A stretch of DNA of 64,000 nucleotides from Octopus bimaculoides (GCF_001194135.2 NC_068989.1:17137280-17201279), one strand, 5' to 3'; numbered from the stretch's first letter, positions 37,907-48,166 are shown. The notes: generated from the letters alone by a model not told the origin. Numbers and translations: made by a program.

Positions 37907-38128
37907 TTACTCCTTCAATGGCAAAACTTGGCAGAAAAAAGGACTCTGAAAGATATGACGACCTGCCCATTTAATGTCCAGTGTGTAACAGCCAGTTTTA
38001 GTGACGAAATAGCTGATGTCATAGGTACAGTAGTCTGTGTAAATTATAGAGATTTCTTCAACAGAGTTCGCCGGACAAGGACCTTGGATACCTACTGTCA
38101 ATGGACCAGTACCTTCTACGGTTCGAAC
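37907..38128 (-). CDS. Filamin-like gene, terminal coding exon completing filamin repeat 2
   Basis: Pyrimidine-rich acceptor ttttctactgttttcag at 38130-38129, phase 0. Encodes VRTVEGTGPLTVGIQGP...YDISYFVTKTGCYTLDIKWAGRHIFQSPFFCQVLPLKE*, matching the filamin-repeat consensus (L.V.I.GP...Y.V.Y.....G.Y.I.IKW.G.HI..SPF). Stop TAA at 37909-37907. Confidence 0.9.
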   Translation of the reverse strand, partial: VRTVEGTGPLTVGIQGPCPANSVEEISIIYTDYCTYDISYFVTKTGCYTLDIKWAGRHIFQSPFFCQVLPLKE

Positions 38129-38319
38129 CTGAAAACAGTAGAAAATAATGGAAAGAAAATGGAACCTTTACAGTCAAATATACACAAAAATACATCATAC
38201 ACACATGCAATCACACATATACAGATGCAATCACATCTGCGTACATGCATGAGTTTATTAATATTACGTAAAACTTCAAAGGCAGCGAGCCGGCAAAATC
38301 GGCAGCACGCCAGAAGAAA

Positions 38320-39098
38320 AATACACAAAGTAAAATCTCAACAATGGCTGAGAAGCTCAGGACTCAAAGCAGAGACTGAGGGATTATTAATTGCAGCACA
38401 AGACCAAAGCCTTCCCACTAGAAATCACCCCCCCCCAACCAACAAAAAAAAAAACAATGAAAGAAATACAAGTAACTGCAGAAAATGTGATGGTGGAGAA
38501 GAAACAATAAATCATATTGTCTCTGGTTGCCCAGTCCTGGCTAAGAAGGAATATATCCACAGGCACGACAGAGTTGGGACCTGTATTCGTTGGAAGCTAC
38601 GCCAACACTGGAATAACAAGAGAAAAAAGATGGTATAGGCACACGCCAGAAAAAGTCACAGAAAACGAGAAAGCAACCATACTCTGGGATATGCCAATAC
38701 TCACAGATAGAGAAATTAAGACCAATAGGCCGGATATAGTTGTCAGAGATCACCAAGAAAAAAATGATTTCTAATCGATGTATCAATACCAACAGATGAC
38801 ATAGATGAAATAGCGGTAACGCGAATGCGGAGCGGGAAAACAGAAAAAAATCCTATTATAGCAGGCGCATTAGGTATGATGAGAAAACATTCAGACAAAT
38901 ACATAACAAAAACACCAAAACTTACAAGTATACATAACATACAGAAAATAGTACTACTAGGCACTGCACACATCCTACGTAAAATACTTTCAATATACTG
39001 AAAATAAGAGCACCACAACAGACCACAGCACATACCCAAGGCACACAGAGCTGCGCTCGGTAGTGCAGTGAAAGCAAGTGATGAAAATAAGACTACTG
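38320..39098 (+). mobile_element. R4/Dong-like 3' fragment (family A), intronic, antisense to host gene
   Basis: WLRSSGLKAETEGLLIAAQDQ..., CRKC...HIVSGC zinc knuckle, RHD and NRPDIVV motifs. Same 3' UTR as 5077-5460, then (TAA)n. Confidence 0.88.
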
Positions 39099-39159
39099 AA
39101 TAATAATAATAATAATAATAATAATAATAATAATAATAATAATAATAATAATAACAATA

Positions 39160-39790
39160 ATAGTTGCCCATATCACGAACGAATGCCCCAGACTCGCTCA
39201 AAACCACTACAAGTTGTGGCGACACGATAAGGTAGCGAATGTGCTACATTGGAAACTGTGTGAAAAGTGGGGACTAAGGAGAGGCACGGCGTGGTATGAG
39301 CACAAACCGTAGAAAGTGGCGAAGTCGGAGACTAGCAAAATCCTCTGGGATTTCCCAATCCAAACAGATCAGGTGCTAGAGCGTAACAGACCAGACCTAG
39401 TGGTGGCGGACAAGGTGCACCACATATGCTATATAGTTGACGTTGCATGCTCCTTTGATCCACGAATGGTCAAAAGGGAAGGCGAAAAGATAAATAAATA
39501 AAACCCTCTTAAGTACGAAATAGCCCGGTTATAGAAAATGAAGAAAGTGAAGATAGCGCTAATTATTGCTGGGAAGAGTATCAGAAGGCACCAAAGGGAA
39601 TATAGAGGGATTTTGGAATAGAATGCCCAGTAAAACTGTTACAAAAGGTTTGCCTCCTTGGCATGGCCAGAATAACCAGGAAAGTATAAGATAGCTGAAA
39701 AGAATGGATAGCATGGTACCGTACGCTGCAAGTAGCAAGCCCGCAAGGCATGCAACACCCCAGGAGCTCTAACAAAACCTGTGACAAAGA
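39160..39790 (+). mobile_element. R4/Dong-like 3' fragment (family B)
   Basis: VAHITNECPRLAQNHYKLWRHDKVA...ILWDFPIQTD...NRPDLVV...IVDVACSFD. Preceded by (TAA)n. Confidence 0.85.
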
Positions 39791-45300: not shown

Positions 45301-46280
45301 GTACTGGTTGTATCACTTGAGGAGCTACTGTTTGTATATGTTGTGTCAGTTGATGTATTTATGCCAGGCGAACCGTCTACTACTATACTTTCTGATGAAG
45401 GATTTGAAGCTACTGATATTGATGCAAGACCACCTTGTGATGTCACTGAATTGGTATCTGCAAAGAGATGTGATGAATCACTGGATACGTCTTTGTCAGT
45501 ATTGTTAACATCTGTGGAGCTCTTCGAAATATCACATATATCGTTATTTTCTTTGATTTTATTCGGCAATACAGTTCTGCGAATCACTCGTAATTTCTTC
45601 ACTTTCACTTGCCTATTATTGGCCCAAAGAGCGGGTGTATCAATAGAAAGACTTTTCAGAAGCAATGCTTTTGAATTTGGATTAGATGAAATAGGATGGC
45701 TAACTATCACTCGAAACGGACTCCCATCGATATCAGTATCATGACGCTGAACACTTATATAGTGGACACCCGTTTTACGAGGTATATAACTAACCAAAGA
45801 TGTACCGTTCATCGACAGTTTGTAATCGTAAGGAATTATTTCTAAGCCATTATTATCTATCTCAAATATTCCATCACTGTGATAATCAAGAATGGGATTA
45901 CTAAATGACAATGTCTTAGTTTCTTGACGATTCAGATCAGTCTGTAGGTCAGTAATGGTTGATCTGAGCAATTTCTGAGGAAAACTATCTGAGGCATTCG
46001 GCCCAAGGATATTAATTTTCAAATACGTTGGAAATTTCTGCAGGCTTGAAATAGTAAACTGAGATTTTCTTCCGACCGTTGCATGTTTGTAACCAGAACC
46101 ACTGATAACTAATGAGCTGCTAGAGAGATCGGTGGGATTTTCCGGGATGTCATTGCAATCATTAAAACTTATCCATTTTTGTTGCTGTGCTGTAAGTTTA
46201 ATCATGTAAGCTAATCGAAATATTTTGTTCGCAGTGCTGTCATTGTTTGCTATGGCGATTTCTTCCGGTGCAATCAACGA
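42354..46280 (-). CDS. Filamin-like gene, 3,927-nt exon: end of CH domain, filamin repeat 1, long Ser-rich spacer, start of filamin repeat 2
   Basis: Stop-free 1,309-codon frame. Acceptor ttttttag at 46282-46281 is phase 0 and continues the CH domain (IPT|SLIAPEEI, cf. filamin IPQVITPEEI). Repeat 1 runs ISGSG...GRKSQFTI...ILGP...SYIPRKTGVHYISV...GSPFRVIV. The exon ends YALGPGLEIGYVKTLNFFQ at donor GTAAGT 42353 (phase 0). Confidence 0.92.
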
Positions 46281-47338
46281 CTAAAAAATATAAAGAAATC
46301 ATCGTTTAAGAGATTTGTGAAAATCATACGTTTATTAGTATATTAAAAACATCTCTATATAATTACATAACAATATCCTAACTGTTACCGCCACACGGGC
46401 TTTTTCTGCTAGAATTTATGGTGGCGTAACGATCAATTTTAAGCGCTGATTTCTTGCCCACCTGAGCTCCTTCAGGAATATCACTAAAAATCGATCTACA
46501 CCCACATCCACCACATCAAAATTATGATATTATCTATGGCATTGCCTGGTCCATAATTGAAAATGGAATACCGTACACAGAAACCAATTACCATGTAATT
46601 TATTCTGATGTGAGTCTCTTAGTATGAGAATAAAGACCGTCTCTTTAATCGCTTCTCTAGCGTAATCACATTTTGGTGCCACCAGTAGTTTTCTTATTAC
46701 CATAAATCACTATGTTCTAACCGAACTAATTATGCCTTCCAATTTTGTTCTAAGACTCTTTCGCTATAATACTTCCTTCATAACGCTCGTATTTCTCTTA
46801 CCGCTACATTTGGCGACATTTAGGTTTTTCACGTCTTTAGCATACCCACCAGCGTGTCTCTCTCTTCTTTTTCTCATACCAGCGCGCCATCACTTCATCT
46901 CCTCCTCCAGTTTTACTGATCAACGCGAAACGCACACTTTAAAATGTCCATAACTATGTCCTATTAGAGTCTTACTCAAGATTTTTATCTTTATTTTTTT
47001 ATCACTTTCCTACCATTTTTGGTCAGATATGATTTATGATAATGCTAAGCATCTGTTATGTGTCTCTGAAATCGGCTGGCCTAATACATTTCTGTCTCAC
47101 TGTTAATTTCTTCTTTGTTAGAAACCGGACCTCATTTGATCTAGTTTCCATAACAATTTTCTCTAACTTTATGGCCTGGCTTATTTCTTGCAGCTGTTAA
47201 CTGACGATTTTGAATTGCTAAAATTACTAATTCTCCATTGAGACCCAATCCTTTCCTCTCCATGTCCTTTTTCTCCTTATCTCCTCATACTTCTTGCTAT
47301 AACTCCTCTTCAACCATTCTTACATTTCTTCCTATTGA

Positions 47339-47482
47339 ACGTGTGTGTGTGTGTGTGTGTGTGTGTGTGTGTGTGTGTGTGTGTGTGTGTGTGTGTGTGT
47401 GTGTGTGTGTGTGTATGTGTGTGTGTGTGTGTGTGTGTGTGTATGTGCGTGTGTGTGTATGTGTGTGTGCGTGCGTGTGTGT
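47339..47482. repeat. (GT)n microsatellite in the intron between CH exon and giant exon
   Basis: Direct reading. Many other (CA)n, (TA)n, (GA)n, (TATG)n, (TAGA)n and (CAT)n tracts occur throughout the window. Confidence 0.95.
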
Positions 47483-47939
47483 ATAAAAATATTCTGTACT
47501 GTGCTATTTGTCAGCGGATACTATGACTGTGCCTTAAGGGTCTCTGAAATTTCGTATTAATCCATACGCTTGAAATACAATTGGACCTTATCAACATAAT
47601 ATGCATGCTTATGGCAGCGGTGACCGATTATCCGAAACAGCTGTAAAAAATTTGTAACATCACTTATTTGTACACGCAGCTTGCCGAGTGAATACGTTCC
47701 TTACACCCATTACTATTAGTTTGATTTTTCCGCACACATACATACATACACACACACACACACACACACACACATAGCCCCTGTGTGTAGCCCCTTGTGG
47801 GTAGTAAAGAAATAACATACACACACATACATGCATACAAGCATATATATTATATCTTATCATATTATATTATATATGAGTGAGTGCATTCAATTACTAA
47901 CCAGTTGTCCGATATTGTCCTCAACTCCATATTACTCAC

Positions 47940-48166
47940 CGTAGGTATATTTAAATGGTCGTTTGCCAACTGTAGTCCCAGACGACAGTTATTGACACGG
48001 TTGTGAGGCTGTAGGAAGGTAAAGTGTGGACATAAACCCGGGCAGACGGCGTTTAGAAGAGCGCATAGGACAATTCCATCGTTCCAGCTCGTGTGGAAAT
48101 TGGTCACTTGAAATTGTGGAAGAACATTCGAGATCCAAATCAGTAGATTTACCTTTCGTTGCTTTT
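47940..48166 (-). CDS. Filamin-like gene, internal exon encoding most of a calponin-homology (CH2-type) domain
   Basis: Translation KQRKVNLLIWISNVLPQFQVTNFHTSWNDGIVLCALLNAVCPGLCPHFTFLQPHNRVNNCRLGLQLANDHLNIPT follows the filamin CH2 pattern (LL.WI...LP...ITNF...W..G..L.AL.....PGLCP). Acceptor tgttgcag at 48168-48167 (phase 1); donor GTGAGT at 47939 (phase 0). Confidence 0.9.

What the first reader, a model, noticed from the sequence alone, without database searches (positions are those of the whole stretch)
37907..48166. Filamin-like gene with only two Ig repeats separated by a ~1,090-residue disordered spacer
Seen: three exons join in frame (phases 0 and 0) to give about 1,458 aa: CH domain, filamin repeat, long Ser/Asn/Glu-rich low-complexity region, filamin repeat, stop. 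Established: canonical filamins have about 24 tandem Ig repeats with short hinges and dimerise through the last repeat. Inference: here the rod is replaced by one very long, probably disordered linker, which suggests an actin cross-linker or scaffold with a flexible, phosphorylation-rich tether. It does not look like a conventional filamin orthologue and may be mollusc- or cephalopod-restricted.
Basis: partly seen in the sequence, partly recalled or inferred. Interest (0 to 1): 0.8.

Follow-up and report, generated by a model that had tools for sequence, protein, structure and literature searches.

The report
Octopus two-repeat, CH2-only filamin-like gene
This is a real, already-annotated but unstudied Octopus bimaculoides gene for a stripped-down relative of the cytoskeletal protein filamin: half an actin-binding domain and two Ig repeats separated by about 1,090 fast-evolving, probably unstructured residues.

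Summary
On the minus strand, three GT-AG exons (48166-47940, 46280-42354, 38128-37907) join in frame. They give a CH domain, a filamin repeat, a 1,091-aa spacer and a second filamin repeat. They are exons 3-5 of a five-exon gene, XP_014769806.1, "uncharacterized protein LOC106868869", 1,541 aa. Exon 2 is at 52091-51894. Exon 1 lies about 4.9 kb beyond the window.

The assembly gap at 40101-40411 is intronic and harmless. The second repeat matches the Pfam model continuously across that intron. The gap-free Argonauta orthologue has the same five exons, with a 968-bp intron there.

The interpretation needs correcting in four places:
- The single CH domain is filamin CH2-type and no CH1 exists, so actin cross-linking is not supported.
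- The spacer is mostly not low-complexity. It holds about 16 conserved islands, and dN/dS is about 0.3-0.4.
- The N-terminal helix + CH2 + Ig module also occurs in gastropods and bivalves, under auto-names such as "filamin-B/C-like".
- The spacer sequence itself is detectable only in octopods.

No functional study was found. I rate it a new variant of a known kind, of moderate interest.

The parts
51894..52091 (-). Exon 2 (aa 18-83 of the 1,541-aa protein). It encodes the conserved N-terminal hydrophobic/aromatic helical module and lies outside the finding's coordinates.
   Evidence: tblastn of XP_014769806.1 to the window. Splice sites cgcAG| and |gtaaga were read. Identity to Argonauta is 78%. 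AF2 predicts helices at 12-45, 47-58 and 73-81. The module is shared with oyster and gastropod relatives.
47940..48166 (-). Exon 3: most of the single CH domain (aa 84-159). It starts with the last two bases of a split codon.
   Evidence: Pfam CH, E 8.4e-16. The best PDB matches are the CH2 half of the filamin-B/A actin-binding domains, E 2e-18.
42354..46280 (-). Exon 4, the giant 3,927-nt exon (aa 160-1468). It holds the end of the CH domain, filamin repeat 1, the spacer and the first two strands of filamin repeat 2.
   Evidence: Open frame and splice sites. The same open exon is present in Argonauta and in another Octopus species.
46179..46280 (-). Last helices of the CH domain (aa 160-193).
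   Evidence: AF2 helices 164-168 and 173-193, with pLDDT about 85-88.
45696..46124 (-). Filamin repeat 1 (aa 212-354). It carries a roughly 40-aa low-confidence loop insertion (aa 257-297, window 45867-45989).
   Evidence: First of two Pfam Filamin stretches. AF2 predicts a beta-sandwich with eight strands. Foldseek matches filamin Ig domains at TM 0.73-0.86, and the best overall hit is 4b7l, the filamin-B actin-binding domain plus repeat 1. The insertion is longer and acidic in Argonauta and is present in gastropods.
42423..45695 (-). Spacer (aa 355-1445; 1,091 aa). It is Ser/Asn/Glu-rich, has no known domain and contains 16 conserved islands.
   Evidence: Composition. Charge-hydropathy and entropy measures. 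No Pfam hit and no PDB hit. Only octopod hits among 1.84 billion representative proteins. dN/dS is 0.37 against a second Octopus and 0.31 against Argonauta. Conserved islands are listed.
44199..44462 (-). Conserved Cys/His-rich segment within the spacer (aa 766-853: CxxC ... CxPSCGxH ... HxC). It is a candidate zinc-binding element.
   Evidence: Invariant C/H columns in the Octopus/Octopus sp./Argonauta alignment. No Pfam family matches. Metal binding is inference only.
43701..43826 (-). Longest conserved island of the spacer (aa 978-1019: CYVQNWLRKSAKVPVRQFTIETNDSGIAINSRSPSPQRTQEF).
42354..42422 (-). Filamin repeat 2, first part (aa 1446-1468), at the end of the giant exon.
   Evidence: The Pfam Filamin stretch covers HMM positions 7-92 of 93 and is continuous across the exon 4/5 junction.
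37907..38128 (-). Exon 5: the rest of filamin repeat 2 (aa 1469-1541) and the stop codon TAA (37909-37907).
   Evidence: Identity to Argonauta is 81%. PDB matches are to many filamin Ig repeats.
40101..40411 (.). Assembly gap inside intron 4 (38129-42353). It is non-coding and is flanked on the left by a retrotransposon-tail fragment.
   Evidence: The Argonauta intron 4 is 968 bp with no gap and no exon.
49232..50140 (.). Assembly gap inside intron 2 (48167-51893).
   Evidence: The exon 2/exon 3 join reproduces the annotated protein and the Argonauta structure.

Best explanation
Shown:
- This is a genuine five-exon protein-coding gene of Octopus bimaculoides (LOC106868869, XP_014769806.1, 1,541 aa).
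- It has 1:1 orthologues in O. sinensis, O. vulgaris, another Octopus species and Argonauta.
- It is a filamin derivative that keeps only three filamin pieces: the second calponin-homology domain (CH2), an Ig repeat directly after it (as in filamin CH2-Ig1), and one C-terminal Ig repeat.
- A conserved 83-aa helical module sits where CH1 would be.
- The rod is replaced by about 1,090 fast-evolving residues with no recognisable domain, still under purifying selection and punctuated by about 16 conserved islands.
- The N-terminal module (helix + CH2 with the motif PH[NH]RVNNCRLG + Ig with a long loop insertion) defines an unnamed family present in cephalopods, gastropods and bivalves.

Inferred mechanism (not tested):
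- The protein most likely acts as a cytoplasmic scaffold or adaptor rather than as a classical actin cross-linker.
- The two Ig repeats would bind beta-strand ligands or self-associate, as filamin repeats do.
- The conserved islands, proline-directed Ser/Thr sites, one RRKS site and two KK/KR clusters in the spacer would act as docking or regulatory motifs on a long flexible tether.
- The lone CH2 would contribute little actin affinity by itself and may serve another ligand.

The confidence of 0.6 is for the statement as a whole. The gene and its architecture are near certain (about 0.95). The scaffold mechanism stands at about 0.35-0.4.
For: Gene model:
- Splice sites were read directly.
- The model is 100% identical to the NCBI protein and collinear with the chromosome-scale assembly.
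- Argonauta has the same five exons in a gap-free locus.

Domains:
- Pfam finds CH plus two Filamin stretches.
- The CH domain is CH2-type by PDB sequence search and by Foldseek (best hit 4b7l, the filamin-B actin-binding domain plus repeat 1).
- CH identity is 42-51% to the mollusc family against 37-45% to canonical filamin CH2.
- No other CH or filamin-repeat sequence lies in the window or the Argonauta locus.

Selection on the spacer:
- The open frame is kept in three or more species; dN/dS is 0.37 and 0.31.
- 344 of 1,091 residues sit in conserved islands, with 11 conserved [ST]P sites, one conserved RRKS site and two conserved K[KR]x[KR] clusters.

Non-globular character:
- The charge-hydropathy measure points to disorder.
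- There is no Pfam or PDB relative, and only octopod homologues exist among 1.84e9 proteins.

Family:
- Oyster K1RFR0 and the gastropod proteins share the N-terminal module, CH motif and Ig insertion.
- Exon boundaries match those in Candidula.

Established knowledge:
- Filamin's primary actin site is in CH1, and CH2 alone binds weakly (PMC3143143).
Against: - No transcript data could be examined here. The exon structure rests on predicted models and cross-species conservation.
- Disorder of the spacer is not demonstrated. The AF2 run on spacer plus repeat 2 used a 3-sequence alignment and gave pLDDT below 50 everywhere, including the control repeat 2, so it is uninformative.
- The scaffold mechanism is inference from domain content.
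- A residual actin-binding role for the N-terminal hydrophobic helix cannot be excluded. MAFFT placed that helix opposite the last helix of CH1.
- No squid, cuttlefish or Nautilus orthologue was recovered, so the age of the architecture within cephalopods is unknown.
- The gastropod and bivalve models are all short (164-383 aa). Whether they share the long spacer and second repeat is only suggested.
Confidence: 0.6

Rival explanations
1. One reading: a dimeric actin cross-linker. The CH domain binds F-actin, the last repeat dimerises as filamin repeat 24 does, and the disordered spacer is a long flexible, phosphorylatable tether between the two actin-binding heads.
For: - The CH2-Ig1 arrangement and the C-terminal Ig repeat are in filamin order.
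- Repeat 2 matches the solved repeat-24 dimerisation domains (1v05, 3cnk, 2eed) at E of about 3e-8 to 9e-8.
- The N-terminal hydrophobic helix was placed by MAFFT opposite the last helix of CH1, which in filamin is part of the hydrophobic actin-binding site.
- The spacer is 20% Ser+Thr with conserved proline-directed sites.
Against: - CH1 is absent.
- Profile-profile comparison of the N-terminal module with CH1 gives probability 0.2%.
- CH2 alone has low actin affinity (PMC3143143).
- Repeat 2 scores no better against the last repeat of a complete filamin (25.3 bits) than against two internal repeats (26.7 and 25.5 bits).
Confidence: 0.17
2. A membrane-anchored scaffold. The N-terminal hydrophobic helix is a transmembrane or signal-anchor segment that tethers CH2, the Ig repeats and the spacer to a membrane.
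For: - The Kyte-Doolittle 19-residue maximum is 2.08 at aa 14-32 in Octopus.
- AF2 predicts one long helix at 12-45.
- The Pomacea homologue has a clean 19-residue hydrophobic stretch, Eisenberg <H> 0.86.
- Basic residues follow the helix in all members.
Against: - In five of six family members <H> is only 0.45-0.54, with charged or polar residues inside the segment.
- The oyster N-terminus does not reach a transmembrane-like hydropathy.
- The feature is therefore not conserved as a transmembrane helix.
Confidence: 0.12
3. An annotation or assembly artefact. Either the giant open frame is not translated as one exon (pseudogene, retained intron, fused models), or the assembly gaps hide further filamin-repeat exons so that the true protein is a longer, more ordinary filamin.
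For: - The assembly is gap-rich: 14 N runs in 64 kb.
- At least one gap is flanked by an artefactual 418-bp duplicate.
- Related models elsewhere are clearly wrong or partial, for example the O. vulgaris chimera and the short gastropod models.
Against: - The same 1,300-codon frame is open in O. bimaculoides, O. sinensis, O. vulgaris, another Octopus species and Argonauta.
- dN/dS is well below 1.
- Repeat 2 is continuous across the gapped intron.
- The gap-free Argonauta locus has no further exon.
Confidence: 0.04

Closest known systems
Canonical filamins (human FLNA/B/C, Drosophila Cheerio, C. elegans FLN-1)
   Same: - The CH domain is most similar to filamin CH2 (E 2e-18; 36-39% identity in structural alignments).
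- An Ig repeat follows it directly, as in filamin-B actin-binding domain plus repeat 1 (4b7l is the best fold match).
- Both Ig repeats are PF00630 filamin repeats.
- A repeat closes the protein at the C-terminus.
   Different: - There is no CH1, so no complete actin-binding domain.
- It has two repeats instead of 20-24.
- The rod and hinges are replaced by a 1,091-aa non-domain region.
- Repeat 1 has a 40-aa loop insertion (70 aa in Argonauta).
- It carries a family-specific 83-aa N-terminal helical module.
Divergent filamins Jitterbug (Drosophila) and FLN-2 (C. elegans), especially isoform FLN-2B
   Same: - These are filamin-type proteins with poorly conserved repeats and long lineage-specific intervening sequences.
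[quoted passage not shown] This shows that short, interrupted filamin forms exist.
   Different: - Jitterbug and FLN-2 have three CH domains including CH1, and they co-localise with actin.
- Their full-length forms have about 19-23 repeats.
- Here there is only a CH2-type domain. One repeat precedes the spacer and one follows it, and no longer isoform is annotated.
- The Octopus CH is closer to canonical CH2.
Unnamed mollusc proteins auto-annotated 'Filamin-C' (Magallana gigas K1RFR0), 'filamin-B-like' (Pomacea XP_025082352-4) and 'filamin-c' (Plakobranchus, Elysia)
   Same: - They share the N-terminal hydrophobic helix module, the CH domain with PH[NH]RVNNCRLG, the Ig repeat with a long insertion, and the exon boundaries.
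- The oyster models end in a last exon like that of repeat 2.
- These are members of the same family.
   Different: - All are short or partial predictions (164-383 aa) with no spacer.
- In Plakobranchus, two giant domain-less ORFs (a separate 2,256-aa model) follow the gene. They have no detectable similarity to the octopod spacer.
- None has been studied.
Single type-2 CH-domain proteins (smoothelin, MICAL, EHBP1)
   Same: They carry one lone CH2-like domain combined with long non-globular regions. The Octopus CH gives weak but significant sequence matches to them (E 6e-5 to 3e-4).
   Different: These matches are far more distant than filamin CH2. Those proteins have no filamin repeats and a different domain order, so they are not the same family.

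Membership tests
Filamin (canonical) | N-terminal actin-binding domain made of tandem CH1 + CH2 | tested here: not met
   - Only one CH domain is present and it aligns to CH2. Alignment to CH1 scores below zero.
- No CH1-like sequence is found in the 64-kb window or the 32-kb Argonauta locus.
- The N-terminal module compared with a CH1 profile gives hhalign probability 0.2%.
Filamin (canonical) | Filamin/ABP280-type Ig repeats (PF00630) | tested here: met
   - Two Pfam stretches, E 1.6e-21, 77 bits against a cut-off of 26.9.
- The AF2 model of repeat 1 matches filamin Ig structures at TM 0.73-0.86.
- Repeat 2 matches 40 PDB filamin entries.
Filamin (canonical) | Rod of many tandem repeats (about 20-24 in animals) with short hinges | tested here: not met
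   Exactly two repeats, 1,091 aa apart. No further repeats are present in the locus or in the gap-free orthologous locus.
Filamin (canonical) | Dimerisation through the C-terminal repeat | not testable with these tools
   No multimer prediction was available. By sequence, repeat 2 is no closer to the last repeat of a filamin than to internal repeats, although solved repeat-24 domains are among its matches.
Jitterbug / FLN-2 type divergent filamin | Three CH domains, including CH1, followed by about 20 poorly conserved repeats with long inserts | tested here: not met
   The protein has one CH2-type domain and two repeats. Only the long lineage-specific insert is shared. The family definition is taken from PMC3143143.
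Mollusc N-helix + CH2 + Ig family (unnamed; K1RFR0, XP_025082352, P0009, P0014, P0016) | Conserved N-terminal hydrophobic helix module upstream of the CH domain | tested here: met
   Alignments A5 and A7. The module is 78% identical between Octopus and Argonauta.
Mollusc N-helix + CH2 + Ig family (unnamed) | CH domain with the motif PH[NH]RVNNCRLG, 42-51% identical to other members | tested here: met
   Invariant columns H138, R140-G147 in alignment A4.
Mollusc N-helix + CH2 + Ig family (unnamed) | Long spacer followed by a second, C-terminal filamin repeat in members outside octopods | tested here: inconclusive
   - The oyster models end in a last exon like that of repeat 2.
- Plakobranchus has giant domain-less ORFs downstream.
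- The Candidula contig ends too early.
- The Pomacea locus is not on record.

The most novel reading that the evidence does not exclude
Molluscs may carry a previously unrecognised 'mini-filamin' family in which CH1 and the whole Ig rod were lost. The two remaining Ig repeats would be linked by a giant, rapidly turning-over disordered region. That region would act as the functional element itself: an entropic spring or mechanosensitive tether, or a multivalent scaffold carrying lineage-specific short motifs and a small Cys/His metal site. The conserved N-terminal helix would be a vestige of the hydrophobic actin-binding helix of CH1, or a membrane-seeking helix. In octopods the whole middle of the gene has become a single 3.9-kb exon.
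Probability: 0.15. Interest if true: 0.55.

Novelty: new variant of a known kind. Interest (0 to 1): 0.35.

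Why it matters
Filamins are defined by a two-CH actin-binding head and a long Ig rod, and their mechanics come from that rod. This gene is conserved across octopods, and its head module is shared by gastropods and bivalves. It keeps only CH2 and two repeats, with a roughly 1,100-residue non-domain region in between.

If the protein is expressed and functional, it is a natural experiment on two questions: what a lone filamin CH2-Ig1 unit does without CH1, and whether a disordered tether can stand in for an Ig rod. 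It also shows that database names such as "filamin-B-like" and "Filamin-C" for the mollusc relatives are misleading.

It does not bear on any long-standing open question, and there is no functional or expression evidence yet, so its importance is moderate.

Tried and rejected
- AF2 of spacer plus repeat 2 with the 3-sequence octopod alignment gave pLDDT below 50 over all 1,187 residues. This includes repeat 2, which is certainly folded, so the run says nothing about disorder.
- Vestigial CH1. MAFFT places the N-terminal helix opposite the last helix of CH1, but hhalign gives probability 0.2% and Pfam finds nothing. It stays an idea only.
- Transmembrane anchor. Only Pomacea reaches a transmembrane-like hydrophobicity, so this is not a conserved feature.
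- Repeat 2 as the equivalent of filamin repeat 24. Scores against the 20-odd repeats of a complete filamin are tied between the last repeat and two internal ones, so the test is inconclusive.
- Spacer homologues. The profile search of 1.84 billion representatives returned only octopod proteins. PDB and Pfam gave nothing. An hmmsearch against the giant Plakobranchus ORFs found no similarity.
- Architecture outside cephalopods. The Candidula contig ends after the first half of repeat 1. The Pomacea protein is not on record with DNA. The Plakobranchus locus ends before any second repeat.
- Literature. No paper mentions the accessions or K1RFR0. The filamin-like proteins in mollusc shell proteomes are canonical multi-repeat filamins, not this family.
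- The upstream neighbour gene that is fused into the O. vulgaris model is not in this window.
- Gap-flank duplication, as seen at gap 3920-3948, was checked for the two gaps inside the gene. None was found at 40101-40411, and only a 25-bp match at 49232-50140.

Full report
**What is there.** The feature lies on the minus strand. Reading the sequence around the proposed junctions gives three exons with canonical GT-AG borders:
- 48166..47940 (227 nt)
- 46280..42354 (3,927 nt)
- 38128..37907 (ending in TAA at 37909-37907)

Both junctions are phase 0, and the joined frame is 1,457 codons with a single terminal stop. Pfam finds a CH domain (E 8.4e-16) and two filamin-repeat stretches (E 1.6e-21) and nothing else. 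An open frame of 1,309 codons at 37% GC has a chance probability of about 1e-40.

The first of the three exons begins with the last two bases of a split codon, so the gene continues upstream. The model is 100% identical, over 100% of its length, to NCBI XP_014769806.1 / UniProt A0A0L8HSB0, "uncharacterized protein LOC106868869 [Octopus bimaculoides]", 1,541 aa. That protein has 84 more N-terminal residues.
- Exon 2 (aa 18-83) is in the window at 52091..51894.
- Exon 1 (17 aa) is not in the window.
- The window is collinear with chromosome CM046609.1 of assembly GCA_001194135.2. Exon 1 lies about 4.9 kb beyond the window's right end.

The finding is therefore exons 3-5 of a five-exon gene spanning 31 kb.

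**The assembly gap.** The gap at 40101-40411 lies in intron 4 (38129-42353). A second gap (49232-50140) lies in intron 2, and two more lie in intron 1. Frame continuity across them is not an issue. The only question is whether a gap hides an exon, and four results say no:
- The second filamin repeat is split by intron 4, yet it matches Pfam positions 7-92 of 93 in one uninterrupted stretch.
- The Argonauta hians orthologue (GAB1603537.1, 1,539 aa) sits in a locus with no N at all. It has the same five exons with the same boundaries, and its intron 4 is only 968 bp.
- The O. sinensis protein reads identically across the junction.
- tblastn with four multi-repeat filamins finds CH or filamin similarity only at the three known places, both in the window and in the Argonauta locus.

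The DNA left of the gap is a retrotransposon-tail fragment (weak zf-RVT match). This is the usual reason for a gap in a short-read assembly.

**Is the giant exon really coding?** The same frame is open in O. bimaculoides, O. sinensis, O. vulgaris, a further Octopus species recovered from sequencing-run assemblies, and Argonauta.

| Region | dN/dS vs second Octopus | dN/dS vs Argonauta (synonymous sites near saturation) |
|---|---|---|
| Spacer | 0.37 | 0.31 |
| Filamin repeat 1 | 0.30 | 0.18 |

These are Nei-Gojobori values. The spacer is under purifying selection, but more relaxed than in the domains.

Amino-acid identity between Octopus and Argonauta:

| Region | Identity |
|---|---|
| N-terminal module | 78% |
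| CH domain | 75% |
| Filamin repeat 1 | 61% |
| Spacer | 46% |
| Filamin repeat 2 | 81% |

**Anatomy of the protein.**
- *aa 1-83: conserved hydrophobic/aromatic module.* AF2, run with a 12-sequence alignment, predicts three helices, the first 34 residues long.
- *aa 84-193: one CH domain.* Its best solved relatives are the CH2 halves of the filamin-B and filamin-A actin-binding domains (E 2e-18 to 2e-15). Alpha-actinin and spectrin CH2 come next. Alignment to CH1 scores below zero.
- *aa 212-354: filamin repeat 1.* It is predicted as an eight-strand beta-sandwich with a low-confidence loop at 257-297. The best fold match of the whole N-terminal model is 4b7l, the filamin-B actin-binding domain with repeat 1. 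The Ig part matches many filamin repeats at TM 0.73-0.86.
- *aa 355-1445: the spacer.*
- *aa 1446-1541: filamin repeat 2.* A conserved predicted helix (PSMECLFMSLHKAIA) precedes it.

**The spacer.**
- Only 4.7% of 25-residue windows have low sequence entropy, so it is mostly not low-complexity. 88% of 51-residue windows fall on the disordered side of the charge-hydropathy boundary.
- It has no Pfam match even when scanned in pieces at E up to 10, and no relative in the PDB.
- An exhaustive profile search of 1.84 billion representative proteins returned only the octopod proteins.
- It is not featureless. 344 of the 1,091 residues lie in 16 islands that are at least 75% identical between Octopus and Argonauta. 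The longest is aa 978-1019.
- Conserved motif candidates are 11 [ST]P sites, one RRKS site and two K[KR]x[KR] clusters. Invariant Cys/His positions between aa 766 and 853 (CxxC ... CxPSCGxH ... HxC) could be a small metal site.
- My attempt to test disorder with AF2 failed. With only three sequences, every residue scored pLDDT below 50, including the control repeat 2. "Probably disordered" therefore rests on composition, rapid divergence with indels, and the absence of any domain match. It is likely but not shown.

**Relatives.** With the N-terminal 400 residues, and then with a family profile, I recovered short predicted proteins from several molluscs:
- the oyster Magallana gigas (K1RFR0, "Filamin-C", 314 aa, plus an alternative model);
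- the gastropods Plakobranchus, Elysia, Pomacea ("filamin-B-like" XP_025082352-4), Candidula and Biomphalaria;
- several unnamed gastropod-like genomic ORFs.

They share the N-terminal helix module, a CH domain with the invariant motif PH[NH]RVNNCRLG, and an Ig repeat with a long insertion in the same place. In Candidula, exons 2 and 3 have the same boundaries as in Octopus. The Octopus CH is 42-51% identical to these proteins and 37-45% identical to canonical filamin CH2.

The head of the protein therefore defines an unnamed family that is mollusc-wide at least. The gene is not cephalopod-restricted.

Whether the long spacer and the second repeat are also ancient is only hinted at:
- Both oyster models end in a last exon clearly homologous to the Octopus last exon. 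One model joins strands A-C of repeat 1 straight to it, which is either a spacer-skipping isoform or a mis-prediction.
- In Plakobranchus, two giant Ser-rich domain-less ORFs (annotated as a separate 2,256-aa gene) follow the head immediately. They have no detectable similarity to the octopod spacer.
- No squid, cuttlefish or Nautilus member was recovered.

**How it probably works.** What is shown is the architecture and its conservation. The mechanism is inference.

In filamins the primary hydrophobic actin site is in CH1, and CH2 alone has low affinity (PMC3143143). Here CH1 is absent. The idea that the N-terminal helix is a relic of CH1's last helix, suggested by MAFFT, has no statistical support (hhalign probability 0.2%). 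A classical actin cross-linker is therefore not the best reading.

I favour a cytoplasmic scaffold or adaptor:
- Two filamin-type Ig domains, which in filamins bind beta-strand peptides and can self-associate, are joined by a long flexible region.
- The conserved islands and phosphorylatable sites in that region would serve as docking or regulatory motifs.

A membrane-anchor role for the N-terminal helix is possible in Pomacea but is not conserved. Dimerisation through repeat 2 is untested. That repeat matches solved repeat-24 domains, but it matches internal repeats of a complete filamin equally well.

**Comparison with what is known.** It is not a member of the canonical filamins. Two defining features, the tandem CH1-CH2 head and the multi-repeat rod, were tested and not met. 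It is also not of the Jitterbug/FLN-2 type, which has three CH domains and about 20 repeats. Those proteins, and especially the FLN-2B isoform (actin-binding domain, 300-aa low-homology region, two repeats), do show that interrupted, shortened filamin forms exist. It is a filamin derivative, and it belongs to the unnamed mollusc family described above. No paper mentions the gene, its orthologues or K1RFR0. The filamin-like proteins of mollusc shell proteomes are ordinary multi-repeat filamins.

**Verdict.** The gene is already in the databases as an uncharacterised prediction, so its existence is not new. The recognition of its architecture and of the mollusc-wide head module is new in a modest way. 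I rate it a new variant of a known kind with interest 0.35.

Noticed in passing
window 3502-4366: An exact 418-bp duplicate flanks the N gap at 3920-3948 (3502-3919 is identical to 3949-4366). This is almost certainly a scaffolding artefact in which the two contig ends overlap.
   Followed up: yes
window 29294-29653 (+) and 53716-54120 (-): Two fragments of a Tc1/mariner-type transposase N-terminus match HTH_23 and HTH_Tnp_Tc3_2 (E down to 5e-9). The second lies inside intron 1 of the filamin-like gene.
   Followed up: partly
window about 38300-38638 (+) and 39750-40100 (+): Two retrotransposon-tail fragments lie in intron 4. Their zf-RVT matches are weak (E about 7e-4, below the Pfam cut-off). 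The second runs straight into the assembly gap at 40101-40411, which probably explains the gap.
   Followed up: partly
window 3543-3887, 15513-16037, 18168-18677, 37005-37346 and others: A short interspersed repeat recurs on both strands, next to TG/CA and (TATG)n-type microsatellites. Its translation contains ...LLSYGDVN.P..VVK.W... and ...FGRPE/QPG.I..DT.PR.H.VGLN..PCGW....
   Followed up: no
O. vulgaris protein CAI9727918.1 (P0025); not in the window: This 1,966-aa model is a chimera. The upstream neighbour LOC115216715 (a 623-aa secreted or membrane-type protein in O. sinensis) is fused into the middle of the CH domain of the filamin-like gene. The neighbour has no match in this window.
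   Followed up: yes
Magallana gigas K1RFR0 (P0008) and alternative model P0010: The oyster model joins strands A-C of the first filamin repeat directly to a last exon homologous to the Octopus last exon. This makes one hybrid repeat and no spacer. It is either a spacer-skipping isoform or a mis-prediction.
   Followed up: partly
L002 25288-32967 (Plakobranchus ocellatus): Two giant Ser/Gln-rich ORFs (1,195 and 1,155 aa) are annotated as a separate 2,256-aa domain-less gene. They lie immediately downstream of the CH-Ig gene, so the gene model is probably split.
   Followed up: partly
window 50408-50962 and about 48200-48330: Long trinucleotide microsatellites translate as poly-Asn/Ile/Leu/Tyr and poly-Val/Leu runs. 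They sit in intron 2, the second just upstream of the exon 3 acceptor.
   Followed up: no
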